DNA of 64,000 nucleotides from NCBI RefSeq assembly GCF_018977255.1, contig NW_024704781.1:558001-622000 (forward strand). The letters are read 5' to 3'. Made by a program: the position numbers and the translations under genes. Numbering within the stretch: the first letter of the stretch is position 1; every line of letters begins with the position of its first letter. This document shows positions 26,349 through 57,306 of the stretch, in pieces. This stretch comes from Callorhinchus milii (Eukaryota). The notes under the pieces are model-generated. The model was not told where the DNA came from. It did no database searches and saw only the letters and a list, made by a program, of their open reading frames with translations.

Positions 26349-28891
26349 CTACACTCTGACTGTGGCGTAGATTGGACCATCGTCCACGTCTTCACGGCGA
26401 TTCCCACTCCTGTTTCCTTATGTCAGTTTGGCGTAGGTGATATCAGGCCAACAATCAGCACGTGTGCTGAGGATCATGGAGAAACCACTCCCAATGATTT
26501 CATCTTTCGGCTCCAAAGGGACCCCAAGACATAGCTTCATTATATGTCCGTGGGTGTGTGTCCCTGTCTCCTCCAAAGCCCCCCGGGAAACCTCAACCGA
26601 CAGCTCTTGAATGGGGGTTGTATTTCTCCCCCGCCCCCAGCTGGGGACCGCAACCCACATATCCAGTGTATGCGCGCATGTCTCCACCTCTCCCCCATGA
26701 ACGCTATGGCTGTTAAAATGCCTGGAGGTCAAAACAAATCAATTGATCATGAGAAAATCCCCCGCTAATTAATTTGTAACGCATAATAATGATAATAACC
26801 TTTTATTTGCTAGATGCTGCCAACGTGAAAGATATTATATAGGTGTAAATCGTAAACACACATGTAGGTAAAAACAAAACGAGCGACAGACAGACACACA
26901 GACAGAAACATATACACACACATACACATACAACCGCTTACACAGATCCAACCCGCACACCCACGGACACATTATACACTTACACAAATTTACATACCCA
27001 AAGATTAGCACTGGATCAGCACATGACCTGAGCTGGTCGAACACAGGGCTGAGCTGGGCTGTCATAGGGTCTGAGCAGGGCTGACACAGGGCCTCAGCTG
27101 GGCTGACACAGGGCTGAGCTGGGCTGACACAGGGCCTGAGATTGGCTGACCCAGGGGCTGGGCTGGGCTGTCATAGGGTCTGAGCTGGGCTGACACAGCG
27201 ACATAGCTGGGCTTACACAGGGCCTCAGCTGGGCTGACACATCGCCTGAGCTGGGCTGTCACAGGGCCTGAGCTGGGTTGAAAAAATGAACCCGTATTTA
27301 CTCACCTCTGGAGGCAACGATTCTTGAGCAAATCTCACCGACGCATCTGAAACAAACAGAAACGTGATTTAACACGAGGACAATTCAGTAATACTCAACG
27401 TTACTTATTTTATCATCAATTACATTGATACTTGAAACTTTTAACGGTTAATGATCAAGACAGTAATAATTATTAGACAGACAGTTGTACATCAATAATC
27501 CCAGCGTACGATATAACTATTTATCGCCTCTTCGCAAAGTCCCAACGCTTTCACAGAATATACTGCATAGTGGATTCTGTGTGCTTTTTGAGCCAGACAA
27601 AATATCCAGTTTGCAGCGAAACTAACATGTATAAAAGAAGTACTATATTTTGTGGATTGTCGACCTGAAAACGGGAAAAAAAAGTCCTTCTTTGAATAAT
27701 GCGGCTGGATATTTATTGTCCACCTGAACAGGCAGATGAACCTCAGTTTAACATCCCATGTGAAGGACAGAACACATGAAGCGGCTGAAATTCAGAGAAG
27801 TGAGTCACACACAGACACACGGATACAGTCAGACGTGCAGACAAGCATACAGTCAGTCATGCAGAAAAATAGACAGAAATATAAAGAGACAGATATACAA
27901 ACAGCCGGTCAGAAACACAGACATACAGTGAGACAAGCAGACACACGGGCACACAGACAAACAGAATCAGAAAGACACACAGTCACACACCCTCACATAA
28001 AAATAGACTAAGAAAAAAGGGGAGTAACAGAGCTGGAGAGAGGGGCAAAGAGAACAATGGCCTCTGGTTTGGGGGAGGCTCATGAGCAAGCGATGGCTTC
28101 GTGTGGGGCTCGGGCACACTGCTGACCAGACATGTTTGTGATCAGCTCCTTTCCCTCTGGGCTCAAACCCAGGAAACCTCTTACTCACATGTGACGTTGC
28201 TGGTCGGGGGTCCACCTCCTGTGGCGGCATTGCTGAAAGAGAAACAAAGTGGAAGGAGAGAGCTATGAATGCTCTGCTGTTTTTGATTATTATTGAAACT
28301 CATCCACGTGATTGCACCATCTACACGAGGTGATGAGTTCCAGTCACACTCCTTCACATGGAACTACATGTGTTTCTCATGAATGTGCAGTTTCTCTGCG
28401 AACCGAATCACCATGAGGATTAGACATAGGCTGGCGAGAGTCAATGTGTCTCTACTTTAAAGTGTGCATTTATGTAACTGATGGGGTCCCACCATCGAAA
28501 ACTACGTAGCTTGTTATTGGAAGCTCTGTCTGCCAAGCTTCTGCTTGTCCAGTTTGCATCTTCCTACCACTTAGGGCTTTTTCTTTCAGGGTAGCAAGAG
28601 CTGAGTTCGATGACTCTCGAGCCCCGTTATGAGGTCTGCCCTTCCAATTCCTGCCGATGAGTGTGTGAGTGAGTACAAGTGCAAACACAATGTGGAGCAC
28701 CAACGAATGGGACTACAGTGGAAAGCTGCACTGGGGAGGGAGCACCAGCACAGGCAAAATGAGGTGAGAGCAGGGAATGCTGTTAGAAGAGAGAGATACA
28801 GATGGAAGCACCTGCGCAGGAAGGATAGGGAGAGAGCATGGATTAGAATAGAAATGTACTCACCTTTGCTCTCTTGGAATATACTGTTTAC
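26349..28891 (-). pseudogene. Cytoplasmic-tail exons of an ITIM/ITSM-type receptor (exons 28891-28864, 28232-28189, 27346-27306, plus a terminal segment about 26467-26349); partial or pseudogenised
   Basis: Three AG/GTGAGT-flanked exons join in phase to GKQYIPREQSNAATGGGPPTSNVTYASVRFAQESLPPE. The downstream segment reads DITYAKLT*GNRSGNRREDVDDGPIYATVRV*. The phase into the last segment does not match, and no ectodomain or TM exon was confidently found. Confidence 0.6.
27025..27280 (+). repeat. Minisatellite, about 22-bp unit (GGGCCTGAGCTGGGCTGACACA), about 11 copies
   Basis: Tandem periodicity read directly. Confidence 0.9.
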
Positions 28892-30800: not shown

Positions 30801-33800
30801 TCTCTGGAGGGACGCTTCCTAATTACATAATTCTGGAGAATTTTGGCTGCAGGACTGCGAGAGGCAAGACCTTGGACCCCAATGTATGTTGGGTAACGGC
30901 TGGAGTCTAACTACATGAAACCGCATAGTTTCCCACTGAGGGTTGTGTGGGAAGACACTACTTCTCCTGAGAGGACCAGGCTCCCTGTTAGCGCTTTGGA
31001 TTGCAGCGTTAACAAGAGCTCACTTGGAGATTTCCTGTCCCAGTGACAGCTAAGCCCTTTCACGTTCTCCCGCTTAGCGAGGCTGTGCTGTCATAAGCAG
31101 TGTCCTGGAATAGTGCGTACTTAATGTAAATGTAAATGTAACTAAGTTAATCGAAATCAAAGCGTAAATAGGAACATTATATCCGTTTAAACGAAGGATT
31201 CAACAACAAATTTTCAATGAAATTTAGGTAGGTATTTAAAAAGGATAAACAAGTGCAAGGGTATGGGAAAGAGCATGAAGTGGGAGTGATTGGGCAGCTC
31301 TTCTGAAGAGTTGGCACAAGCGCGATGGGACGAATGGCCTCATTGTTTCCTTTGACTCTATGAGCGAAACATATACCGGCTCTGAGACTCCGTGAAATTG
31401 AAAGCCCTAATTTTACAGTCTTTCGTGTATCCGCACATGTTGGTTTAACACATGTGGCTAAAGTTGTCTCTTGGTATCGTGCAGCATTTTTTGTTTGTCT
31501 TGGTATCAATGTATGTTGTGCATCAGGTGCTTTATCAAATAGGAGGATGTCTATAATCCGGCAGAAGACTAACATATTACGGATGGGATAGAAATATTTG
31601 TTGTTGTTGTTGTTTCCATGTGACGAGAAGGATAAATTTGAAGGAGAACAAACGCTTGTTCCTCAGTCAAATCAAATAGCACTGTGTTATATGTAACTTT
31701 GTTCACCCTTTCAAGTTATGTTACATGCACCTTATTATTTTTTTTCTCTCAAGGATTAATTGAAATCTTTCCTCATGAGAATTCGCTGCTGGTGGGTTTG
31801 CTTCTGAAACAGAAGAATCCATCCGACGTGAAATGCGCTAGATAAATATAATTTTGTATTATATTTTATTGTATCCTTAGCAAACTTGGTTCTGTGGCCG
31901 GTAAAACACTCAGTTGCTTCACATTTACCCAAGCACCGAACATAAAAATTATTGAAAATGGTTAGATCCAAGTTTGGAACTTGCATCACAATATTACACG
32001 CTCAGAGTGCTGGCCGTCAATCAATGGCACCTCTATTTAGGAAAACAGATTTTCAAATGAAAAGCGATTTTTAGGTTACATTGAGTGCAAGAATTGCTGA
32101 TGATTAGCAAATGTTGGATAAGGTGGGTTTCGTGGAGATAACAGTGGAGTTCAGGATAAACTCTCAGGTGAGAGCTCCAAAACAAAGGATGTATTTGGTC
32201 AATTTTCCTTAAGTATAATTTAGGGGTGTGGCGGCAGGACTAGAACAACAACAACAACAACAAGATTCCATTTATAAAGCGCCTTTCACGTCAGGAGGAC
32301 GTCCCAAGGCGCTGCACAGTTGGGTCATGACCCGAGCAGGGGGGAAATGGTCAGGGTGAGGGGAGGGAAGGGAGGGAGCGAGGAGGGGGAAGAGAGTCGA
32401 GAGGGGAGCTGAAGGCTCGGCTGAAGGCTAGAAGGCTAGAATAAACCTTTGTAATATCAGTTGTCTTCATTATTTGCATCAGCGTTTTCCATCCACTTGG
32501 ATGAACTTTTCAAAATGTCACAAACGGTTTACCCTAATTGTAAGAATATGTTCTACTTGTGTTTGCGAACACGATTATGGAAAGAGCTCACAGCACTGAG
32601 AAACACATTGAGACAACATCCACACAAGAAATTAACATATTACAAACAAGTATAATGACGTGTGACTGTTCCCTGATGGTCTAGCGCCAGATCGGCGCTC
32701 TCATCTCATTGTTTATAGCATATCAGTCTCTTTTCATACTGACCTCAAAGATTGGTCAACGTATCTTTCGAATGGCTGCTTGGGATGTAATGTTGCACTT
32801 CCACCTCTGAACCACTGCCCCACTCCGCCACTGCCTCACCCGTCAGGCCACTGAAACCCTCATACACGCCCTCCTCGCTCTTTGCCCTTCATCATCCCCA
32901 AGCTGCCCCCATTCTCACATCCTGATCTCCGACTGTTCAGCGCATTGGGACGTCCGTCTGATGCGAAAGGTTCTTTATAGCCGTAATCATGATGCTGGAA
33001 ACCTGAAACAAAAACAGAAGTCGCTAGGAACAGTCAGCAGGTCAGTCGGGGTCTATGAAAAGAGAAAAGTGGGTCAACATTTCGATCGACGACCTCTGAC
33101 GAAGCGTAATGGACCCTAAATCTTGACTCACATTCTCCATAGATGCTGGCTGACCAACTGAGTGTTCCCAGCGACTTCTTTTTGCTTTACAAATTTTTTT
33201 TTTTTCCTGACGTGAAAGTCGCTATACAAATGTAATGTGTTGACTGATTTAAATAGTGAAATAAACACTAATACACACATGTAAAGGACAGAGAATGTCC
33301 ATATTGGCCATCCCAGATCATACCTGTTTTGGCTTTATGAACAGTTCTTTCATGGATGATTAAACATGCCCTGTCAACACACCATTTCATACAACCAAGC
33401 TCTGGGATTTCCATGTGTAGGTGGGATACTGGAATTCTCAACTTGATTTGGATACTCTTAAGCATGGTCACGACTTTTCTCTTTTGCCCGATAACCGAAT
33501 GATCACACGCCAAAAAAATCGAGATACTCATTTTGGATATTTTTCTGATTCATTTGGAAGACTCATATGGATTCTGCCGGTAAGACATTCCAGAATCTAA
33601 CTGCTCTGTGCCTGAAAACCAATTCTCCTAACATTCCCCATTTGCTCGTTTGATAACCAACCGAAACTGACACCATTTCATCAAGAGACCACACAAGCAC
33701 TTGCAAGAAATCCATTCACACACTCAGAATTTGGTCGCTGCCTTCAGCTCTACTGCATGTGTAAAAAAATGTTTAGTACAATAAATTAAACTATTGTATG

Positions 33801-35687: not shown

Positions 35688-38027
35688 TCATTTTCCTTGA
35701 TTGTTACAAGCAACTATGAGATGCCAAGGATATTTCACCGCATCCATCAACTGTTGCCTGAACTTACTTTGAGTCACAGCGTAAATGCATGTATTTGTGC
35801 AGGTACCCAGGAGCTGCAGTAAGTAGGCGCTTTCCTGCGTGATGTACACAGGGTCCTCGGGACCCGTGTAAGTGTACGTTTTTGTAATCCGCCAGTAGAA
35901 GAAGAACACAACTTGAGTCAGCCAAAGGAACACGAAGCAGCCGGTTATGGTGAAGAGCAAGACGATAGACCTTTTGCGAGTTTCTATTTCTGGGTCCTTC
36001 TGGTTTTCCCCTCTGCTCTGCCCGCGGAGCACTTGGCGCACCCTATTGGCCAATAAGATTGACCTCATGGTCAGAGCGTTTAGCAGGACAATCAGACAGA
36101 AGGGAAGCAGGGGTGTCAAGATAACTTGGAACCAGTCAAAAGCCGCCCAGGCCAGTGAAGTGTAAAAATTGGCCATCAATTGACACATCCATGGGATATT
36201 ATTGTTTATATATATTGGTTCTTGGATGAAGAGCCAGGGAATGTTTTTCACTCCACTAAGCAAACACACCGTAGTTATTACAAGGGCCGCCGTTCTCTCG
36301 CGGCAATATTTCACTTTCAGATTCGGGCAACAAATTGCAATAAATCTATCCAACGTGAAAGCCACGGTTAGCCAGACAGAGCCGTCCGTGGTGACGTAAA
36401 TCAGAGCCACTTTGATAGTACAAACGGGGGTGATGTACAGAAAGCTGTTTGGGAAGTAAAGCCCTCCGATGCGATTCAGTATCACGTCAACCAACAGCAC
36501 GAAAAAATCTGCTGCCGCCATGGCCACCAGATAATTGGTAATACATTTGGACAGACCACATCTCCCCCGGGATAGGATGGCCATCGCCAACAAGTTGACT
36601 AGAAAATAAAACAGACGGTGATCATTATTCTTATATGTTATTGAAAATTCACGATTGATTCTGTGCTTCTGAAATTATTTTGGGAGATAACTGGATGTAC
36701 ATTTACAAACTCTATCAAAAAAAACTGCCTGGCTCTGTTTCATTGGAAGGGCGGCATCTCTGTAAATTCAACACATTCTCAGCTCTGCATTGGAGTGTGA
36801 GGTTAGATTATAAAATAATAATCCTTCCATTAGACATAACGATTTTCACATCTTCTAGACGTCTCAGAAAATACTGTAAAGTGAATTGACTGTGTGTTTG
36901 TGGGTGAAATGCGGCATACAATTACACACATCCGTGTCCCGAAATTGTCGTGGAAACAGTGACCAAATAGTTATTTTTAAACCCTGAAATGGTGCTTGAA
37001 CTCACAGGCCTCTGTCTCAGAGGTGACAGTGCTTGAACTGAGACAGATTGACACTCGGTATAAAACCACTATATTCCTGCAATGCATTCCGGTTTAATGT
37101 GCCCCGAAATGACTCCAATTTACAGTGTTGTGCTTAGAAAGGTGATTCTTTCAGCTAATTTTGGCACAGGAATTTCCCATAGAAAAAAAAACCCACAGTG
37201 CCGCAACATAGAGTGAGTGTCCAACTTTATTTGGGCGATTCTTTACAGTAACCAAGAGAGGGAAACTAGCTCCTGTTTTCAACGATGCCACTGGATTCAT
37301 AACGTCGATTAATCATACTGAAGGGACCTCTATTAAAAGTCTGAGTACATGAGATATCCGACAGCACATCCCCATCCCACTACTGCAGCACACATAAACC
37401 ATTGAACTTGAATGTCAGCACAGTCTTGGTATCCATAGTCTACATGGGTTCCAGGTCCTGATGCAGGACTTGAACTGACAATCATCTGACTGAGTGTCGA
37501 GGGTGTCAAAAATTGAGCTAAGCTGACAATATGCATCGTTGGATGTATCAACGATGCACTCTCCTTTTCAATATCTATATGCTCACTTTCAAGGTCGTTT
37601 GATCCATGAACACTTTAGCCTCCCGTATGCTGTATTTTGATACCAGCCTTTCCTCGACCTCAGAATCTCTGGCTTACCTTGTAATATTCCTGTACACGTG
37701 TTAGTCCAGGACACACAATCCATCCTGATTTTCACACATGGAACATATTGTGCATGGAAACGGTTTCAACTGACCTGTCATATATCCAGATATGCTTTTG
37801 TATTATTTTAATATAAAATTTATACGTTTTATAATTCTGCAACTATATCCCCCTCTGCACCAAACTCATACTCTTAACAGAACTCTCACTGTGATCCACC
37901 TCACTCAGTTCTCTTCTCCCTCTGTTGGGCACTCTGCTCAAATTATCACAACCTTACCAGGTACGCCAACGGCTGCAAGAATAGGATAACATATTGCATA
38001 CACGCGTCCTTCTGTTGGTTTATGCAT
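35688..38027 (-). CDS. GPR139-like class A GPCR, copy C (divergent paralogue); exon 1 38027-37958, exon 2 36598-35688; 326 aa
   Basis: Exon 1 MHKPTEGRVYAICYPILAAVGVP ends CCTG|GTAAGG and joins in phase 1 at TTATTTTCTAG|TCAAC (VNLLAMAILSRGRC). Seven TM segments, AADFF, DRFIAIC, TNTCIY; same intron position as copies A and B. Confidence 0.92.
36815..37050 (-). mobile_element. tRNA-derived SINE, diverged, in the intron of GPCR copy C
   Basis: Reverse complement of tail, core and a weak head. Confidence 0.65.
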
Positions 38028-39340: not shown

Positions 39341-40646
39341 GGATGAAAGCTTGTCTTCTTCCGCCAATCAAAGTTTTCTGTTCTTCTGAAACTACCAAAT
39401 GTGATTTCAATCCAGAATTACACAGAAGGTATTGAGGTCCGAGTTCGTGAAGACATATTCATATTAACTGGTGAAGTAAAACTGTGAAAGGGCGCAAAAC
39501 ACAGTTTTGTACGGCACATAGGATTTTTATGAAGTCCTGAAATGAGTGACCAGATATATAACAAACATTAAGAGATTCCAGAAAACATGATTCCTTGACT
39601 GCTGTTCAATAAATTTTGAAACTAGCTCTTTGGAAGACCCAAAATAGCTTATTTGGTAGAGCGTAAGACCGAAAATATAAAGAACCCTGCTTGAAGCCGA
39701 GTTTCCGTATTTTTCTTTCTCAGTCTGACACTCACTCATAGTCTCTGTATTCCTCAAGTTAACACAATCATAAAAGTAAATCTGACGGTTTGTGTAACAA
39801 TCCTTTGTTTCTTTTCTCCGGATTTCTGCAATTGAATCGAGCACGCACATTGGGTCATTTCCGGATTGTTGATATTTTGAAACAAATCTCATACTAAAAC
39901 AACAACAACAAAAAGATTCCATTTATAGAGCGCCTTTCACATCGGGAGGACGTCCCAAGTATGCTGGACAGTTGGGTCACGACCCGAACATGGGGGAACT
40001 ACAAAGATTGTACTCCCTGCCTTGCCTACTTGAAGCAATGTTTGAAGTTACTCCTCTTCGATCACCTTTCCAATCCTAGCTACGCTGTCCTACACCACTC
40101 CTGATCCCAACGTTCTGATCCGGGCCAAAACGCTGACTGTCCAGCAAATATGGTATAGAAATGTAATTATTGTGGATGTTGTTGTTAGGATCCAGCGTGT
40201 AATGTTGAACACGATAGAGACTGCATCCAGCGATCCCAGTTCCAAGCTTGATAAGCTTTGCTTATTTGCTTATCCCGGCTTTCATCCAAATTTCGCGGAA
40301 TATTGGTAAAATGTCTGAGTCCAGGTTAAAACGTTAATTCCATCGCAGAATACCGATCGTTCTTCGGAGTTTGCAGCGGAATCTGGAACAACTTTTCTAA
40401 CGTCACAATTCGAAAGCTCAAGAGGTGAACACTCAATTATATTTCAGTCTAAAATATAACATATTAATTTCCTTTTTCTGGAAGTTTTGGAGAGATGAGA
40501 AAACCACATGAACACATCGACTCTGCATTGCTAGGTACACAACCGTCACTGGTGCCTGAATTCGCAAATGTTTCTCCGTCTGCCATTTCGAACAATGTTA
40601 TCCTTTACACATAGTTTTTTTTCCCCCAAGCTCCGTTGCAGTTGTA

Positions 40647-45068: not shown

Positions 45069-47737
45069 ATGAAGAGATATCACAGCTTTTCAGAAAAGGT
45101 GTATCAAACAGGCACAATATTTCAGATAATGTACATATACTATCCTTTTCTGGCTGTTATTGGTGTTCCAGGTACGTCTATATCAATAAGAATTTAAATC
45201 GTGTCTTCTACGAAAATGCAGTGAAACTATTTTGATGTATTAGTTACACTGACATATGCCGCGGAAGAATAACTGCCTGGTTTCTTTCATTTATTTTATT
45301 TTATTTGCATTGCAGAGGACCACCAATTCGCTGAATTAATAAATAGATGTACAATAGTATGTTATTATTATATTACATGTTATATATTTCCTTGCATTTC
45401 ATACAGCGCCTTATATGTGTACAATACGTCTCAAAACGCTTCACTGAATATCCTGTAAAGTGGGATGAATGCATATTGTGTGAGATCTTAAATAACTTAC
45501 CGAAAATGGGATTGTAAATAAAAAATAAATTCAGCAATTTGCAAAATTAGAATATCAAAAACGTTGTTGAAATAAAAATGTAGACACAGATGCAATATTT
45601 CCTCCATTGTTGCTTTAATACTATTACATAAATTTGCACCATGGACCAGACCAATCGGGCCATTGAGTTTGCATCGCCTCTCAGCAACGTGTTCTGTCTT
45701 AACCAACTCATTCCGCCTGAAGCCGCTTTTCCTACGAAATATGCATTGTATTAATATTATCGAAAATCAAGACCTACACGGTGTATGTTTTATTTATGTG
45801 AAATTAAGTGCTTCCATCTTTTTGTTGAAGATTCATGATTGCATTATACAGAACAATTAGAATGAACATGCCTCTGCCATAGATTGGCATAATAGATAAT
45901 GCGCCACAATATATTTCATTTCGCAAACAGTCTTCAATGTTTTCCATCGTCTCCGACCCGTATTCAGTGGAAAATCATCAGAGTGATTCATCCTAAGTCA
46001 ATGAAAACTGTAGTGGAATACCATAAATTTCATTATTTAACATTCAATCATACTTCATTACTTGTGACATCTCAAATGAGATTGCGTGAAATTCTAATTA
46101 TTTGATACACGTTCAAGGATTAAAACTGACATCATGCGCTTTTTCTGCATTTACTCCCTTATTCCATGCATCAATTTTACCTGAGATTCTCATTAATATT
46201 GCAAAAATTAATTAATTTTACATAATGACTTTCACAACAAGAGACATTTTTAGTGGATTTTCTGAAAGTTGTAGTGACACTGTAATTTATAGGCGAAGTC
46301 ATCAGCCAAATTGCAACTTTACAATATTGTGGCGGGATCTTTAAACGTTCACTGAACAGCTTTGAATCTATCGAGTTAAAGTCTTATCTTAAGAACTGAT
46401 ATTCCGAACACACAACATTGCCTCAGCAACAAACTGCAAAGCGAGCTCGGAGCTTGAGTTCAAAAAGTTAAAATGCGGTGGTAGAAAACTGAAATTAAAA
46501 CAAAAACCGCTGAGGACACTGTTGAGAGAGGAAAGTGAGTTAACGCTTCTCTCGTGAGTTCGAAGCCTGACTTTAGTTTTAACTGAAGCTGAATATAAAC
46601 AGGAATAATGTTTATCGTGTTATATTTTATCTGTGTAGTACTAACGGCGTTTTATCTCTTGGTGAGAAATACAAGGTTGATAATATTTAATAGCTTATGT
46701 ATCTGAAGAGATGCAGTTGCATTTAAAAGACCAGATTATCCCAGAATTCAAACTTGTTAGATTATTTAGAATACATAGACCGATTCTGCGTTATTTTAAA
46801 TCGATATTTTTAATTAACTTGTATCTTTCTTTCAGTTAACTTGGTTGCAATTGCGATCCTATCCAGAGGTAAATGTGGACTCTCCAGATGCATCACTCGT
46901 TACCTGGTGTCCATGTCAGCAGCCGATCTACTGGTTATTATCAGTGACGTGATATTGACTCGACTGAATTATCTTTATTTCCCAATTTGCTTCCTGGACC
47001 TCACTCCCATGTGTTCGCTAGAAAGTACTCTGCTCTGTGCAGCAACTGACTGCTCTGTGTGGCTAACAGTGGCCTTCACCTTTGATCGCTTTATAGCTAT
47101 TTGTTGCCAGAAATTCAAAACCAAATATTGTACTGAGAGAACAGCGACGCGTGTGATAGGAATAGTCTGTACTCTGAGCTGTTTCAGAAACATACCCTGG
47201 TATTTTATTTATCAACCTTGGTATATAATTGACAATTTACCGTGGTTTTGCAAGACAAAAGAAATTTATTATAGTTCATGGGCCTGGGGAGTTTATTCCT
47301 GGACTTCCACCTTATTAACCCCTTTTGCTTCCTTTGTTCTAATTTTTCTACTAAACATCCTGACCATCAGACACATTTTAGCGGCAAATAGAGTCCGCAG
47401 GTGTGTTCTCGGCCAAAACAGCAATGAAAATGCTAACGACCCAGAGATTGTCAACAGGAAAAAGTCCATCGTTATTCTCTTCGCTATATCCGGGAGTTTC
47501 ATACTTTTGTGGATGACCTACATTGTATATTACTTATATAGACAAACTGCAAACTATTTCTCTTACTCGGGGTACAATGATCCAGTCTATGTTCTGTATG
47601 AAAGCGGTTGCATGCTGCAGCTTCTCGGTAGCTGCACAAACACGTTCATTTATGCTGTGACGCAGGCTAAATTCAGGGAGGAATTTAAAAAAGCAGCTAA
47701 ATATCCAATAAATATGATACGCAAAGTGGCCCAATGA
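45069..47737 (+). CDS. GPR139-like class A GPCR, copy B; exon 1 45069-45171, exon 2 46836-47737; 334 aa
   Basis: Exon 1 MKRYHSFSEKVYQTG...AVIGVP ends CCAG|GTACGT; acceptor TCTTTCTTTCAG|TTAAC; about 90% amino-acid identity to copy A in exon 2 by manual comparison (30 differences in about 300). Confidence 0.92.
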
Positions 47738-50270: not shown

Positions 50271-51295
50271 CCCGCTCCATCCGTTCAGCTGGCTCCGGCT
50301 GCTCCATGTCTCCCGCCAGATGCCCATTGATTAACTGCCAGATATTTGAGGTGATTGGCTCCAGCCTCCGCAGTTATGACATGTGCTATCGTCCAATAGG
50401 TCAAGTGCAAAAAGTCCACGAGATCAGAAACTCTTTGAAATCAATTATCTTTATATGAATAACAGCAAAGAACAATAGTATCGTGAATTATAAGGAAGAT
50501 AATGAGGCTATGAGGTCCATTGTGAAAGTTTCGACTCTATGAAAGGGTTTTCTCAGTCAGGCCCACTGCCCATTCTTTCCCCATATCCATGCGATTTTAT
50601 TTTCCTTTGTAAGTTCCAGTCCAATTCCTTTTTGAAAACTACTATCGAATCTGTTGCCACTTTCACAATTTACATTCTAAACCGTAACAAGACTATTATT
50701 TAAAAATAAAGTCCCTCCGTCTCTCCTCTGGTGTTTTGACAATTATCTTCAATCTGCGAAAGCTTCTTCAGAAGCTACAAAAGTATAATTTGGAAACGAA
50801 GTGTGATGTATGTTATGAAGAGTTAGGAATAAAATTGAATACAGGATTAAATTATGTTTCACACAAAAACATTAATGATAATGTGCACTGAAATGTGCAC
50901 AGCTCACCTTCACTGAGAAAAGTGTCGCAAAGTCTGTGGCCAATGGATCAAAGGTATTATGACAGAGGGATACCTCAAGCATTAAACATGATATAACGTG
51001 AATTGTTGTGACTGTATCTGTCAGTCAATTGCCAGTCAATTCACTTTACAGTAGATTCTGTGAATTGCTTTTTAACATCTCGAAGACATGATAAGTCGTT
51101 GTATTAACTGTATGAATTAATAATATGTCTTTCACTCTTTCACTACATGAACCATTCTATCAGTGTTTGCTTGTGGTTCACAATTAGCCGAGTGTTTCCT
51201 CTGAGAGACACAGCAGCAAAGTCACAATCTGCGAAATAGGTCAACTGTCAGGACAAACATCTGTTCTGAGATGAAACCCTTTCGCTCCTCTTTGG

Positions 51296-51683
51296 AGTTC
51301 AAGTACATTGGTGTAGTCTGACAGTAGCACCGTGTGTGTGATGGCACAATAATGCTGGTGTCAGATATAGCCACGGGGATCTTAGCTACAGTTGATCTCT
51401 TGCTGATCGTCTCCAGATTAGTGGTGAAACGTGCTGTTGTAAACTCAACACTGAAAGTGTCCAGATTTGGTGTTAAGCATTGTGTTGGAAATTCAGCACT
51501 GAAAGTCCCCATCATAATTATATCTGTGTGTGTCCAGATGAGGCTCCCCTGGATACTGACTGTACCAGAACTTTAAAACAACAGTGAAATCAGCAGAGTA
51601 GGTGCAGCTCAGGGTTACAGTCTGACCTTCAGTAACAGACACTTACATCTGTGATGGCACAACGCTGATTCTATTCGCTTCCT
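51296..51683 (-). pseudogene. TCR alpha/delta-type V pseudogene with 23-RSS (V exon 51683-51335)
   Basis: After acceptor CTGGCTACAG: EANRISVVPSQM*VSVTEGQTVTLSCTYSADFTVVLKFWYSQYPGEP; later frameshifted ...SDTS/HYCAIT; RSS CACGGTG (51334-51328), 23 nt, ACTTGAACT. Confidence 0.8.
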
Positions 51684-53103
51684 CTGTAGCCAGAGAGAAC
51701 ATATTATTCACTCTCACACAAGGGCCAGAGGTAAATCTCAAAATTGTTTTAAGATTGCGAGAGAGTGACTTCCGCATAAGCGCCCAAAATAATGAATTTA
51801 ACGGCGCAAAGTATTTAGAGGCGCAAATGGGCTGCGGTGTTATTCTACAAAACGTAAAGTCACCACACGTTACAGTCAAACTATACAACGCGCTTTTGGA
51901 CATTCTCCATACCGAAACGACATTCTGTGTAAGGACTATCGACTCCATCATTTAGATTCTATCCTGGGATGTAAAAAAATCAACCTGGTAATATATTGTA
52001 GTTCAAGTCAGACCCAATCTGCCTGTAATCCCATATATTTATATAATAATAAGAAGAATCCTTGCATTTTGATATAGCGCTCTTCACGTCGGGAGGACGT
52101 CACAAAGCGCTTCAAAGAACACACTCTAAAGAGAATTGACTGCATATTTGTGGGCGAACGCGGCAGCCAATTGCGCACAGCAATGTCCCACAAACAGTCG
52201 TAGATTGAAAATGACCAATTTATTATTGCCTGTGGTTTTGGAGGGATTATATATTTCAATTATCCCTTCAATTCCATTTCAAATCATTATTTTGCTTGAT
52301 TTCATCTGCATTAAGTAATATAATAATCCTTGCATGCGATGGAGTGGATTTATATTTTCAATTGGAGCGCACAGCAGTGTCCAACAAAGAGTCATGGATT
52401 GAATGACCAAACCACTGTCAATTACAAATGTTTTTCTTGCATTGTTTATTATCCCGAAAAAGTATCCGCCAATCGACTAACAACCGTGTTCCTTCTCTGT
52501 GATTTGTAAACGCACTCGTGTGTGCTGAATAAGGAAACTTGCCAAAAATTTCGCCGAACCCAGGTCCTCTCGCTTGCGAGCCGATTTGTCTCACCAGTAC
52601 GGTACAAGACTCCACTGACAGTAAAATATCGCTTTCCAAAATTTCTCTGTGAAAATGAATGTCAGATAATTCTTAAGTGCTGTATTTTGCATCATAGTAT
52701 TATTTTACCCACCGCTATGCTACAGAACTCCGAAGGTCCTCTCTCACTCTAACAAATGAAAAATTGGCTGCGGCCTTTTGACTCCCAAAATATACAGTGA
52801 ATTCAGTTTACAGTATATTTTGCGAAGCACTTTGAGACATCTAAATCGCATTGATTATTCGATTTGTTAATATGCTTCTTCATTGCTATTGACAACATGT
52901 CTGCATTCCAACAAACATTTATCACAATCTGTTATCTGTTGGTGAAAAAAATCTCAAATGTACAGTAAGAAAAGTATTATATATTATAATTCACTTAATA
53001 TGAATTAAATAAAGTGTAAGCTAGGATCGCAGTTGGAAGAGGGTTTGTTACACTCTCTTTCACTAACTGTACTCTTTTGGTTCCCAGCTTTGGTTGTGAT
53101 GAG

Positions 53104-53444
53104 GGTTACTGTACGAGGTTTCCTATCATGTGTATCACTGTGGTGCAGACTGAGTGCACAGTGATACAGAGCGGAGTCTGTCAGCCGCACGCCGGCGATG
53201 GTTAAAATGCTGATTCCCTTGGCAGTGTCAAGAGAAGCAGAAATATGATCTCCAGTGGGGTTTCCTCCCTCTCCTGAGGGTTTTCTGTGGAGCAGGTATT
53301 TCAGTGCCTCGCCAGGGGACGGACGGTACCAGGAGACGCTGAGATCTTGTCCGCACAATCCTGAATATTTGCAATGTAATGTAGTGTTCTGACCAGCAAA
53401 CGCCGTTTGTTCAGGCGGTGTCTGGGAAACTGTATAACTCGATT
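53104..53444 (-). CDS. Leaderless NAR-TCR supporting TCR-delta V exon (53444-53143) with 23-RSS
   Basis: Acceptor CCATACAG|AA; SSYTVSQTPP...LHCKYSGLCGQDLSVSWYRPSP...LTDSALYHCALSLH; extra Cys in CDR1; RSS CACAGTG (53142-53136), 23 nt, ACAGTAACC (53112-53104); no leader exon found. Confidence 0.88.
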
Positions 53445-53529
53445 CTGTATGGTTCAAAATCAAAAGATACTTTGAATCGCACCATCTTAGAATCGTATAA
53501 TATTTGCAATTGTCATACCGTATTATGAG

Positions 53530-53882
53530 GAATTCGGACGTCTCAAAACGCTTCTAAGAATGCATTGTAAAGTGCAGTGACTGTGTACACTGTGGGTGAA
53601 AATCGGCAGTCGATTGAACACAACAGTGTCCCACAAACACTCGTCCATTGAGCGTCTACGTTTTTACCATAATTATTCGTAAGTTTCTTTAAGGGATTAT
53701 TACACCTAGAAGAGAGATCCACTATCGACTGACTATCGGGTTCCTACTTACAGTTTGGTAAATATAGGCGTGTGTGTGGTTGTAGGAATTTACCCAAAGT
53801 TGTGTCCTGCCCGGCAATCGAAATCAAGTCCTCTCTCTTGCAAGAAAAGTTGTCTCAAAACTGAGCTACATGACTCCACAGG
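53530..53882 (-). mobile_element. tRNA-derived SINE, diverged
   Basis: Reverse complement of tail, core and head. Confidence 0.75.
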
Positions 53883-54664: not shown

Positions 54665-54901
54665 NNNNNNNNNNNNNNNNNNNNNNNNNNNNNNNNNNNN
54701 NNNNNNNNNNNNNNNNNNNNNNNNNNNNNNNNNNNNNNNNNNNNNNNNNNNNNNNNNNNNNNNNNNNNNNNNNNNNNNNNNNNNNNNNNNNNNNNNNNNN
54801 NNNNNNNNNNNNNNNNNNNNNNNNNNNNNNNNNNNNNNNNNNNNNNNNNNNNNNNNNNNNNNNNNNNNNNNNNNNNNNNNNNNNNNNNNNNNNNNNNNNN
54901 N
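54665..54901. other. Assembly gap (237 N)
   Basis: Run of N. Confidence 1.
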
Positions 54902-55603: not shown

Positions 55604-55915
55604 GTTCTATAAGATCATGTTTGAATTCTGCACCAAAACAAACAAATGCTGAGAGATTGGACAGGATATCCTATTTTTCCATCATTATCCCATCTTCTGA
55701 ATTTTGATTTGTCCAAATCATGTGTATTTTCTTTATTTCCTCCCAAATACAGACAAAGTGCACGGCCCAAAGAACGCCTCTCTGCAAATAATTTCACAAA
55801 ATGTCTGCTTGAAACAATCAAGATTCAAAGCCAATTTTCGTCATGTTGAGGAGCATTAAGCAGGAAAAAATTATCTGTGATCACGCCTCTTGTATCTCCA
55901 TGCAACTAGATATAC

Positions 55916-56694
55916 AGTATTTGTGCTGATGTTTCACAATGTGATAATCCCAACCCAGTAACCTTGTAATCTTTGTATAGAGCTGTACATTTGTAGTCAG
56001 CGCTGTCTTCAACTTGCAAGTCATTAATTTCCAGAGAAGACGACTTCGATCCCGTGTCTATCTTTACAACAAACCGTCCTTCACGAGGGATGGGCATCCA
56101 AGGTGTGCCTTTTCCAAACTGCATAAAAAATTCCACGTTCTTGAAGTATTCACGGTTACCTGCTTCAAAGACACAGCTGATGGTCAAAGCCTCGCAATCT
56201 TCTTTCCTAATGGAGGATGGTGTCTGCTTTACTGAGGCACTGAAAACATCTGAAAATTATACACAACATAACATCAGTTAAACAGGTCTTCAATGCTGAC
56301 CGCTTCTATAAAAATTACATCCCAAACTTTGGCTTAATTATGATTGATATCAATTAACATGATTTAATCACGATATACAATATCATTATATTATGAATTC
56401 ACATAAATAATTTTTATATATAATATAATTATCATAATATAATTTATAGCAATTCCCTGTTTAATTCCTGCCACAAATAACGCAGTTATTTCACTTCACA
56501 ATATATTCCGAGAAGCTCCTTAAAACGTCTCATAGAAGTGTTAAAGCAATATATCAATGCAAGGATTATTAGTATAATTATTATACCGCAGATTGTGATG
56601 ATGACATTCACTGGTGCTGTGTAGTGTTTTGTAATGGAAACAAACACTTACATTGTAGGAAGAGGAAGGAGATGGAGACACAGAGGAGAGACAT
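55916..56694 (-). CDS. NAR-TCR (IgNAR-like) V gene: leader 56694-56652, V(-D) exon 56249-55944, 12-RSS 55943-55916
   Basis: MSLLCVSISFLFLQ|YVFSASVKQTPSSIRKEDCEALTISCVFEAGNREYFKNVEFFMQFGKGTPWMPIPREGRFVVKIDTGSKSSSLEINDLQVEDSADYKCTALYKDYKVTGLGL. IgNAR-like frameworks with the CDR2 region deleted; RSS CACATTG, 12 nt, ACAAATACT. Confidence 0.9.
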
Positions 56695-56975: not shown

Positions 56976-57306
56976 AATTAATAATAATAATAATAATAAT
57001 AATAATCCTTGCATTTGATATAGCGCTTTTCACGACGGGAGGACGTCCCAAAGCGCTTCACAGAACACACTGTAAAGTGAGTTGACTGTATATTTGTGGG
57101 CCTACGCGGCAGCCAATAGCGCACAGCAATGTCCCACAAACAGTCGTGGATTGAAAATGACCAATTTATTATTGTTTTTGGTTTTGGAGGGATTATTATT
57201 AGGCTCTGTGTGGAGTAAGGAAACTTGCCCGAGGTTTCGCCCTCTGCCGGGAATTTAACTCAGGTCTCTCACTTGAAAAGCGAGTGCTCTAACCACTGAG
57301 CTACTG
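56976..57306 (-). mobile_element. tRNA-derived SINE, young near-consensus copy
   Basis: Close match to 22646-22969 in reverse orientation; long (TAA)n tail. Confidence 0.92.

What the first reader, a model, noticed from the sequence alone, without database searches (positions are those of the whole stretch)
26349..28891. Hidden micro-exon chain encoding an ITIM/ITSM receptor tail, about 25 kb downstream of the TCR V array on the same strand
Seen: exons of 28, 44 and 41 nt, each with a pyrimidine-tract AG acceptor and a GTGAGT donor, join in phase 2 then phase 1. They create VTYASV across a splice junction. Further on, one frame holds ITYAKL and IYATV separated by a single TAA. Established: (I/V/L/S)xYxx(L/V) is the ITIM consensus, and inhibitory Ig-superfamily receptors have tails built of short exons. 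Inference: an unannotated inhibitory immune receptor gene or recent pseudogene. Caveats: the third exon ends in phase 0 but the best acceptor for the last segment (CCTCAG, about 26468) is phase 2, and I could not place an Ig-domain exon.
Basis: partly seen in the sequence, partly recalled or inferred. Interest (0 to 1): 0.7.

Follow-up and report, generated by a model that had tools for sequence, protein, structure and literature searches.

The report
Orphan ITIM-like tail exons, elephant shark
Downstream of a GPR139-like receptor gene in the elephant shark T-cell-receptor V region lie a few tiny, well-spliceable exons that spell inhibitory-receptor (ITIM) motifs, but there is no ectodomain or membrane exon, the frame is broken, and no relative was found, so it is at best a gene remnant and could still be chance.

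Summary
Exons of 28, 44 and 41 nt (28891-28864, 28232-28189, 27346-27306) each end in GTGAGT. Joined, they read KQYIPREQSNAATGGGPPTSNVTYASVRFAQESLPPE. Further on, one frame holds ITYAKLT-TAA-...IYATVRV-TAG.

The window is Callorhinchus milii, in the TCR alpha/delta V region. No Ig-domain exon and no type-I transmembrane exon lies on that strand between 28.9 and 51 kb. Exon C ends in phase 0, but every usable acceptor for the ITYAKL frame needs phase 2. No intermediate exon repairs this, and a TAA splits motifs 2 and 3.

Three protein-database searches found no homologous tail. ITIM-like chains in general are common by chance (55% of shuffled windows). Only the narrow "YA" type is rare (2% for the chain, about 10% for the pair).

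An old RefSeq model of the upstream GPR139-like gene uses exon B's acceptor, in another frame. GPCR > X > A > B > C > 26466 is also one open 341-aa frame.

Ranking:
- orphaned, decayed ITIM tail module: about 0.4
- chance: about 0.33
- live alternative GPCR tail: about 0.17
- intact IgSF gene: about 0.07

No intact Ig-type inhibitory receptor gene was found in this window. Interest is modest.

The parts
28864..28891 (-). Micro-exon A (28 nt), reads (x)KQYIPREQ(S). Possible cassette exon whose inclusion sets the ITIM frame.
   Evidence: sequence; acceptor at the 93.7th percentile, donor AAG|GTGAGT at the 99.97th. No copy elsewhere in the window.
28189..28232 (-). Micro-exon B (44 nt), reads NAATGGGPPTSNVT + T in the ITIM frame. 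The old RefSeq model XP_007909117.1 uses the same acceptor but in the MPPQEVDPRPATSH frame.
   Evidence: acceptor 99.7th percentile, donor 99.2nd; the model maps to 28233-28123.
27306..27346 (-). Micro-exon C (41 nt), reads (Y)ASVRFAQESLPPE. It completes VTYASV across the B/C junction and ends in phase 0.
   Evidence: acceptor 99.3rd percentile, donor GAG|GTGAGT 99.95th.
26349..26466 (-). Putative terminal exon segment after the cctcag| acceptor. In the phase-2 frame it reads TRADCWPDITYAKLT-TAA-GNRSGNRREDVDDGPIYATVRV-TAG. In the frame actually delivered by exon C it reads HTC-TGA (stop at 26457-26455).
   Evidence: acceptor at the 98.4th percentile. The first poly(A) signal lies 1.8 kb further on, at 24574.
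27020..27281 (.). 22-bp x 12 minisatellite in the C-to-terminal intron. The old RefSeq model translates it as CDS.
   Evidence: TRF; model residues 337-405 map to 27271-27065.
32919..33002 (-). Exon X (84 nt, phase-preserving) of the old RefSeq model. It is derived from a dispersed SINE-like repeat.
   Evidence: 77-89% similar copies at 32255-32323, 39898-39998, 57009-57063 and elsewhere; acceptor 99.9th percentile, donor 97th.
35691..36674 (-). GPR139-like 7TM receptor exon. It has an internal consensus donor AAA|GTAAGT (last exon base 35768), 30 codons before its natural stop. That donor's phase is compatible with exon X and exon A.
   Evidence: 7tm_1, E 1e-17; 98% identity to C. milii XP_007909117.1, and hundreds of chondrichthyan GPR139-like hits..

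Best explanation
This is an orphaned, partly decayed cytoplasmic-tail module of a former ITIM-bearing type-I (most likely Ig-superfamily) inhibitory receptor. It is stranded in the elephant shark TCR alpha/delta V region, 7 kb downstream of a GPR139-like gene.

In the ancestral gene, the short exons and the terminal exon would have encoded a tail with three tyrosine motifs: VTYASV, ITYAKL and xIYATV-RV-stop. Src-family kinases would phosphorylate these motifs, and they would recruit SHP-1/SHP-2 through their tandem SH2 domains. The 22-residue Y-to-Y spacing in the terminal exon fits that mechanism.

Today the module cannot work as such a receptor, for three reasons:
- No ectodomain or transmembrane exon precedes it.
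- Exon C (phase 0) cannot be joined in frame to the ITYAKL frame, which needs phase 2.
- A TAA separates motifs 2 and 3.

Its still-strong splice sites may be used only by read-through transcripts of the upstream GPCR gene.

Shown here: the sequence anatomy, the absence of Ig and TM exons, and the frame defects. Inferred: the origin from a real receptor gene and the signalling mechanism.
For: - The three motifs share a (T/I)YA core. The in-frame pair is 22 residues apart, and the last motif sits 3 codons from a stop, as in LILRB1, LAIR-1 and SIRPa tails (my knowledge of those families, not tested here).
- The YA-type chain occurs in 2% of shuffled windows and the YA-type in-frame pair in about 10%. 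Their adjacency, same strand and correct order make the conjunction about 5e-5 per window.
- The splice sites of B and C, and the donor of A, are in the top 1% of all sites in the window.
- A good acceptor (98.4th percentile) sits 25 nt before ITYAKL.
- The exons are unique in the window and are not repeat copies.
- The absence of Ig and TM exons and the frame defects fit a remnant.
Against: - No homologous tail was found in 5.8e9 proteins of length 220-795 aa.
- phmmer of the terminal open stretch against 1.84e9 representatives gave nothing relevant. These searches are insensitive for 37-54-aa queries.
- A whole-gene pseudogene should leave Ig and TM debris, and none is seen. A tail-only duplication or a deletion must therefore be assumed.
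- Perfectly kept splice sites sit oddly beside lost reading-frame continuity.
- The statistical rarity depends on a post-hoc 'YA' definition. With any ITIM allowed, such compositions are common.
Confidence: 0.4

Rival explanations
1. Chance. Generic ITIM hexapeptides and splice-like motifs are frequent, and a motif-driven reader strung together unrelated pieces. Nothing here is or was a receptor tail.
For: - There are 275 ITIM matches in the window (222 expected), and [TI]YA.[LVI] occurs 4 times against 4.1 expected.
- 55% of shuffled windows give an open three-micro-exon chain with an ITIM.
- Strong micro-exons number 8 observed against 5.4 expected, and clusters of 2 are common.
- The chain does not connect in frame to the other two motifs, and a stop lies between those two.
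- There is no Ig or TM exon and no homologue.
- My estimate of about 5e-5 per window still means roughly one chance case per 1-Gb genome if a whole genome was scanned.
Against: - All three motifs share the canonical (T/I)YA core, and their spacing and position next to a stop are typical of real tails.
- The splice sites are far better than the null required.
- A RefSeq model independently uses exon B's acceptor.
Confidence: 0.33
2. These are live alternative 3' exons of the upstream GPR139-like gene. Splicing from the internal donor at 35768 (with or without the SINE-derived exon X) into A-B-C and the 26466 acceptor would replace helix 8 and the short natural tail. The new tail would be about 68 aa, cytoplasmic, and would carry one ITIM (VTYASV), ending ...SLPPEHTC-stop. 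Skipping the 28-nt exon A shifts the frame to a short tail (...ATSHMRR-stop). This resembles the way the 53-nt exon 7 toggles the CEACAM1 L and S tails.
For: - GPCR(36584-35768) > X > A > B > C > 26466 is one continuous 341-aa ORF. The tail would lie on the cytoplasmic side, which is the correct topology.
- The C. milii model XP_007909117.1 already joins the GPCR donor, exon X and exon B's acceptor.
- Splice-site percentiles are high.
- There is precedent for ITIMs in GPCR tails: SST2 (PMC6148080).
- There is precedent for a frame-toggling micro-exon: CEACAM1 exon 7 (PMC2490704).
Against: - Phase compatibility is a 1-in-3 event.
- Exon X is an exonised repeat.
- The RefSeq model uses another frame, ignores B's donor and translates a minisatellite, so it looks partly ab initio.
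- No protein of 220-795 aa containing the A-B peptide or of 250-795 aa containing the full A-B-C peptide is in the database.
- None of about 120 listed chondrichthyan GPR139-like homologues, including the long ones inspected, has such a tail.
- The two other GPR139-like genes in the window have no comparable downstream exons.
- This reading does not explain the out-of-frame ITYAKL/IYATV pair.
Confidence: 0.17
3. This is an intact inhibitory Ig-superfamily receptor gene whose leader, Ig and TM exons lie outside the stretch examined, that is, beyond the GPCR and the V segments or beyond the window.
For: The motifs and splice sites are as above. Large introns and nested genes occur in vertebrate genomes (my knowledge).
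Against: - It would need an intron of more than 22 kb containing a same-strand GPCR gene and rearranging V segments.
- The chain is frame-broken before motifs 2 and 3.
- No matching protein is in the databases.
Confidence: 0.07

Closest known systems
Cytoplasmic tails of LRC/FcR-like inhibitory IgSF receptors (LILRB1, LAIR-1, KIR, PIR-B type)
   Same: The motifs have the form (V/I)TYAx(L/V) and xIYATx. Two motifs lie about 20-30 residues apart, and the last is a few residues from the stop. The tail is split over short exons. This comparison rests on my knowledge of those families. The ITIM consensus itself is quoted in PMC6148080.
   Different: There are no Ig or TM exons, the frame is broken between exon C and the terminal exon, and a TAA lies between motifs 2 and 3. 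PIYATV lacks the -2 aliphatic or Ser residue. No sequence homology was demonstrated.
CEACAM1-L / CEACAM1-S switch by the 53-nt exon 7 (PMC2490704)
   Same: Including or skipping a micro-exon whose length is not a multiple of three decides whether the ITIM-bearing frame is read or an early stop is reached. Here the 28-nt exon A would play that role.
   Different: CEACAM1 has Ig and TM exons and experimentally shown isoforms. Here nothing is known about expression, and the upstream coding body would be a GPCR.
GPCRs with ITIMs, e.g. somatostatin receptor SST2 (PMC6148080)
   Same: An ITIM in a 7TM receptor's C-terminal tail could recruit SHP-2.
   Different: The SST2 ITIMs are part of the constitutive receptor sequence and are not supplied by alternative downstream micro-exons. 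There is no evidence that the shark isoform exists.
C. milii RefSeq model XP_007909117.1 ('probable G-protein coupled receptor 139', 405 aa)
   Same: It maps to this locus: 98% identity over the GPCR part and 100% over the downstream exons. It uses the GPCR internal donor, exon X and exon B's acceptor.
   Different: It reads exon B in another frame, runs through B's GTGAGT donor, skips exons A and C, and ends in the minisatellite. It contains no ITIM chain.

Membership tests
ITIM-bearing type-I IgSF inhibitory receptor | At least one cytoplasmic (S/I/V/L)xYxx(I/V/L) motif | tested here: met
   VTYASV (across the B/C junction) and ITYAKL fit the consensus. PIYATV does not, because it has P at -2.
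ITIM-bearing type-I IgSF inhibitory receptor | Extracellular Ig-domain exon(s) upstream on the same strand | tested here: not met
   The regex signature scans find none between 28.9 and 51 kb. Pfam on 141 open stretches from 28.9 to 52 kb finds only rearranging TCR V segments and a V pseudogene, at or beyond 51.2 kb.
ITIM-bearing type-I IgSF inhibitory receptor | Single-pass transmembrane segment followed by basic stop-transfer residues, upstream of the tail | tested here: not met
   Hydropathy scans of the minus strand from 28.9 to 52 kb find none outside the GPCR.
ITIM-bearing type-I IgSF inhibitory receptor | Uninterrupted reading frame through all tail exons | tested here: not met
   Exon C ends in phase 0, but all YAG acceptors for the ITYAKL frame need phase 2. 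No repairing intermediate exon exists. A TAA lies between motifs 2 and 3.
ITIM-bearing type-I IgSF inhibitory receptor | Sequence homology of the tail to a known member | tested here: inconclusive
   There were no candidates or no score at E<=10, and phmmer of the terminal open stretch gave only a compositional hit. The queries are too short for these tools to see distant relatives.
ITIM-bearing type-I IgSF inhibitory receptor | Transcription and use of the predicted junctions in leukocytes | not testable with these tools
   No RNA-seq or vertebrate genome collection is available. Exact-product look-ups found nothing.
ITSM-bearing receptors (SLAM family, PD-1) | TxYxx(V/I) motif | tested here: not met
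   None of the three tyrosines has T at -2; the residues there are V, I and P.
GPR139-like rhodopsin-family GPCR (the upstream gene) | 7tm_1 domain and close homology to annotated GPR139-like proteins | tested here: met
   Pfam 7tm_1 at E 1e-17. 98% identity to C. milii XP_007909117.1, and 1150 hits at E<=1e-20.
GPCR isoform with an ITIM C-tail | In-frame junction of the 7TM body to the ITIM exons | tested here: met
   A 341-aa continuous ORF runs through GPCR-X-A-B-C-26466. This is shown only in silico.
GPCR isoform with an ITIM C-tail | Existence of the isoform (mRNA or protein) and conservation in relatives | tested here: not met
   No database protein of 250-795 aa contains the A-B-C peptide. 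No inspected homologue carries such a tail. RNA evidence cannot be tested here.

The most novel reading that the evidence does not exclude
A chondrichthyan GPR139-like 7TM receptor acquires an ITIM-bearing cytoplasmic tail by alternative splicing. The tail would come from downstream micro-exons captured from a defunct Ig-type inhibitory receptor, and a 28-nt cassette exon would switch the ITIM frame on or off. That would be a GPCR wired to SHP phosphatase signalling by exon capture, inside the TCR alpha/delta locus.
Probability: 0.12. Interest if true: 0.65.

Novelty: new member of a known kind. Interest (0 to 1): 0.3.

Why it matters
If the remnant reading is right, an ITIM-type inhibitory receptor gene once sat among the TCR alpha/delta V segments of a holocephalan. 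That would be a small data point for the history of paired and inhibitory receptors near antigen-receptor loci in the oldest jawed vertebrates.

If the exons are live as an alternative GPCR tail, it would be an unusual example of exon capture linking 7TM signalling to SHP phosphatases.

If it is chance, the case is a useful calibration. Generic ITIM-plus-splice-site chains can be found in about half of random 64-kb windows.

Tried and rejected
- **Word-indexed protein search of the spliced peptide, padded to receptor length.** The first attempt had the region mis-set and covered only KQYIPREQSNAATGGGPPTSNVT. The second covered A-B-C plus LSTRADCWPDITYAKLT. Neither found anything.
I then used that job on the exact 106-aa open stretch 26421-26738(-). 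It gave only a T/S-rich mucin-like compositional hit. I state this openly.
- **Exact-product look-ups.** I tried the GPCR, P0001 and two local ORFs. Nothing was on record. Two of these look-ups were wasted on an off-by-one-codon error.
- **Searches for missing gene parts.** I looked for Ig or TM exons, for an intermediate exon that would repair the phase, for copies of the tail elsewhere in the window, and for similar exons downstream of the other two GPCR genes. All were negative. The only other TYAAV (21748, + strand) lies in a tRNA-derived SINE directly after a stop.
- **Literature.** No paper links C. milii or the shark TCR loci with an ITIM gene. UrIg2 near TCR alpha/delta (PMC12227049) has no reported ITIM. 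Peptide-string searches gave only noise.
- **Type-II (C-type lectin) receptor with an N-terminal ITIM.** Rejected, because no usable ATG or frame exists and the stops follow immediately.
Full report
**Observation.** On the minus strand the three micro-exons are exactly as described.
- Exon A is 28891-28864 (28 nt, ctgcag|, AAG|GTGAGT).
- Exon B is 28232-28189 (44 nt, tctctttcag|, CAT|GTGAGT).
- Exon C is 27346-27306 (41 nt, tgtttgtttcag|, GAG|GTGAGT).
- Joined, with two leading nucleotides completing a split codon, they read KQYIPREQSNAATGGGPPTSNVTYASVRFAQESLPPE. The tyrosine codon of VTYASV is split T|AT across the B/C junction.
- About 0.9 kb further on, one frame reads ...LSTRADCWPDITYAKLT, then TAA (26420-26418), then GNRSGNRREDVDDGPIYATVRV, then TAG (26351-26349).
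- The cctcag| acceptor places the first exon base at 26466.

None of the motifs is an ITSM, because none has T at -2. PIYATV is not a strict ITIM.

**Where we are.** The window is Callorhinchus milii.
- The 7TM open frame at 35691-36674(-) hits Pfam 7tm_1 at E 1e-17. It is 98% identical to XP_007909117.1, 'probable G-protein coupled receptor 139' of C. milii, and has hundreds of chondrichthyan GPR139-like relatives.
- Two further GPR139-like genes lie on the plus strand, at 16574-17539 and 46814-47734.
- On the minus strand, rearranging TCR V segments lie at 53.0-53.5, 59.0-59.5 and 61.5-61.8 kb. A frameshifted V pseudogene lies at 51.2-51.6 kb. A VNAR-type V lies at 55.9-56.3 kb.

**Is there a gene body?** No.
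- Strict and loose Ig signatures find only the V segments.
- Pfam scanned all 141 open stretches of at least 40 aa on the minus strand between 28.9 and 52 kb. It gave one V-set/ig hit, which I attribute to the V pseudogene at about 51.5 kb, the only Ig-like stretch the signature scan found in that range, and nothing else Ig-like.
- Hydropathy scans find no single-pass TM segment with a basic stop-transfer outside the GPCR.
- The tail exons have no copy elsewhere in the window.

**Does the chain hang together?** Only in part.
- A>B>C is open and phase-consistent.
- Exon C ends in phase 0, whereas every YAG acceptor that opens the ITYAKL frame (26721, 26709, 26703, 26640, 26466) needs a predecessor ending in phase 2.
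- No intermediate exon of length 3n+2 with positive-scoring splice sites exists between them.
- Spliced C>26466, the frame reads ...SLPPEHTC-stop. ITYAKL and IYATV are then out of frame, and they are also separated from each other by the TAA.
- The first poly(A) signal after the TAG is 1.8 kb away.

**Chance.**
- Generic ITIM matches are everywhere: 275 in the window against 222 +/- 15 in Markov shuffles. [TI]YA.[LVI] occurs 4 times against 4.1 expected.
- With permissive splice criteria, 55% of shuffled windows contain an open three-micro-exon chain with some ITIM. Only 2% contain one with [SILV].YA.[ILV].
- An in-frame YA-type pair 12-40 codons apart, allowing one stop, occurs in 9.75% of shuffles.
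- Requiring both, on one strand, in the right order and within 3 kb, gives about 5e-5 per window. That is small, but it amounts to about one chance case in a 1-Gb genome.
- In favour of reality, the sites are much better than that null demanded. Donors of A, B and C are at the 99.97th, 99.2nd and 99.95th percentiles of all GT sites. Acceptors of B and C are at the 99.7th and 99.3rd, and the terminal acceptor at the 98.4th. Exon A's acceptor is only at the 93.7th.

**Homology.**
- The word-indexed search of 5.8e9 proteins found nothing for the A-B part (220-700 aa candidates). It also found nothing for A-B-C plus the piece up to the first stop (250-795 aa candidates; 6 word-sharing candidates, none at E<=10).
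- The exhaustive phmmer search accepts only exact window sequence. Run on the 106-aa open stretch ending in ITYAKLT, it returned one T/S-rich repeat protein, a compositional match to the non-motif part.
- Exact-product look-ups found no contigs.
- These negatives exclude an annotated or assembled protein of ordinary receptor length carrying this exact tail. They cannot exclude diverged relatives of so short a peptide.

**An unexpected link.** XP_007909117.1 (405 aa) maps onto the window as follows:
- The GPCR from 36584 to an internal consensus donor (AAA|GTAAGT, last base 35768), 30 codons before the natural stop.
- Then an 84-nt exon X (33002-32919).
- Then an exon that begins at exon B's acceptor but is read in the MPPQEVDPRPATSH frame, straight through B's GTGAGT.
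- Then the 22-bp minisatellite at 27271-27065.

Exon X is a fragment of a dispersed SINE-like repeat, and the last junction uses weak sites, so the model looks partly ab initio. It still shows that a gene-prediction pipeline connected the GPCR to exon B's acceptor.

The GPCR donor leaves phase 1, X preserves phase, and exon A needs exactly phase 1. GPCR>X>A>B>C>26466 is therefore one 341-aa open frame ending ...VTYASVRFAQESLPPEHTC-stop. Leaving out the 28-nt exon A gives ...ATSHMRR-stop.

This topology is legitimate, because a GPCR C-tail is cytoplasmic. It recalls the 53-nt exon 7 of CEACAM1, which switches between ITIM-bearing long and short tails (PMC2490704), and ITIMs are known in a GPCR tail, SST2 (PMC6148080).

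Against this reading:
- Phase compatibility is a 1-in-3 event.
- No homologue inspected carries such a tail.
- The other two GPR139-like genes here have nothing comparable downstream.
- No such protein is in the database.

**Verdict.** The letters are real. The inference of a hidden inhibitory receptor gene is not supported, and what remains is a ranking of explanations.
- A stranded and decayed ITIM tail module, possibly picked up by read-through transcripts of the GPCR: about 0.4. It explains the canonical (T/I)YA motifs, their spacing and near-terminal position, and the good splice sites. It also fits the missing body and the two frame defects.
- Pure chance: about 0.33. The rarity rests on a post-hoc motif definition, and nothing external corroborates the exons.
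- A live alternative GPCR tail: about 0.17.
- An intact IgSF gene with distant exons: about 0.07.

RNA-seq junction counts and a tblastn against chondrichthyan genomes would settle the matter. Neither can be done with the collections available here.

Noticed in passing
window 55909-56256 (-) and 53008-53553 (-): A V domain whose best solved-structure matches are shark VNAR domains (E 4e-14). About 2.5 kb downstream lies a V segment with an extra CDR1 cysteine (CKYSGLCGQD) and a 23-spacer RSS (heptamer at 53142). This looks like a NAR-TcR V plus its 'supporting' V-delta in a holocephalan. The N gap 54665-54901 lies between them.
   Followed up: partly
window 16574-17539 (+), 35691-36674 (-), 46814-47734 (+): Three GPR139-like 7TM genes are interspersed with TCR V segments, reminiscent of olfactory-receptor genes at the mammalian TRA locus. 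None has an in-exon ATG before TM1, so a short 5' coding exon is likely.
   Followed up: partly
window 27020-27281 and 32919-33002 (-): The old RefSeq model XP_007909117.1 translates a 22-bp x 12 minisatellite and a SINE-derived exon as coding sequence, and truncates the GPCR's natural C-terminus. It is probably a chimeric or partly ab initio model. The model also differs from the window at 5 of 273 GPCR residues, while its downstream exons are identical.
   Followed up: partly
window 51225-51642 (-): A TCR V pseudogene. It reads CTYSADFTVVLKFWYSQYPGE... in one frame and ...RFTTNLETISKRSTV...Y.C in another, which implies a frameshift.
   Followed up: no
window 21650-21760 (+), 32247-32346, 39898-39998, 57009-57063 and others: A dispersed tRNA-derived / SINE-like repeat family. 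One copy supplies the only other TYAAV match in the window, and another supplies exon X of the RefSeq model.
   Followed up: partly
window 3766-4335 (+): A stretch open in two overlapping frames, made of repeating units of about 20 residues (…TETRPVIQRPGLLYRDQACY…). It looks like a long-period tandem repeat and is probably a minisatellite rather than a gene.
   Followed up: no
window 25400-26230: A CT/GA-rich low-complexity block, including (CT)48 at 26103-26199, lies immediately 3' of the putative terminal exon. It gives long spurious open frames on both strands.
   Followed up: no
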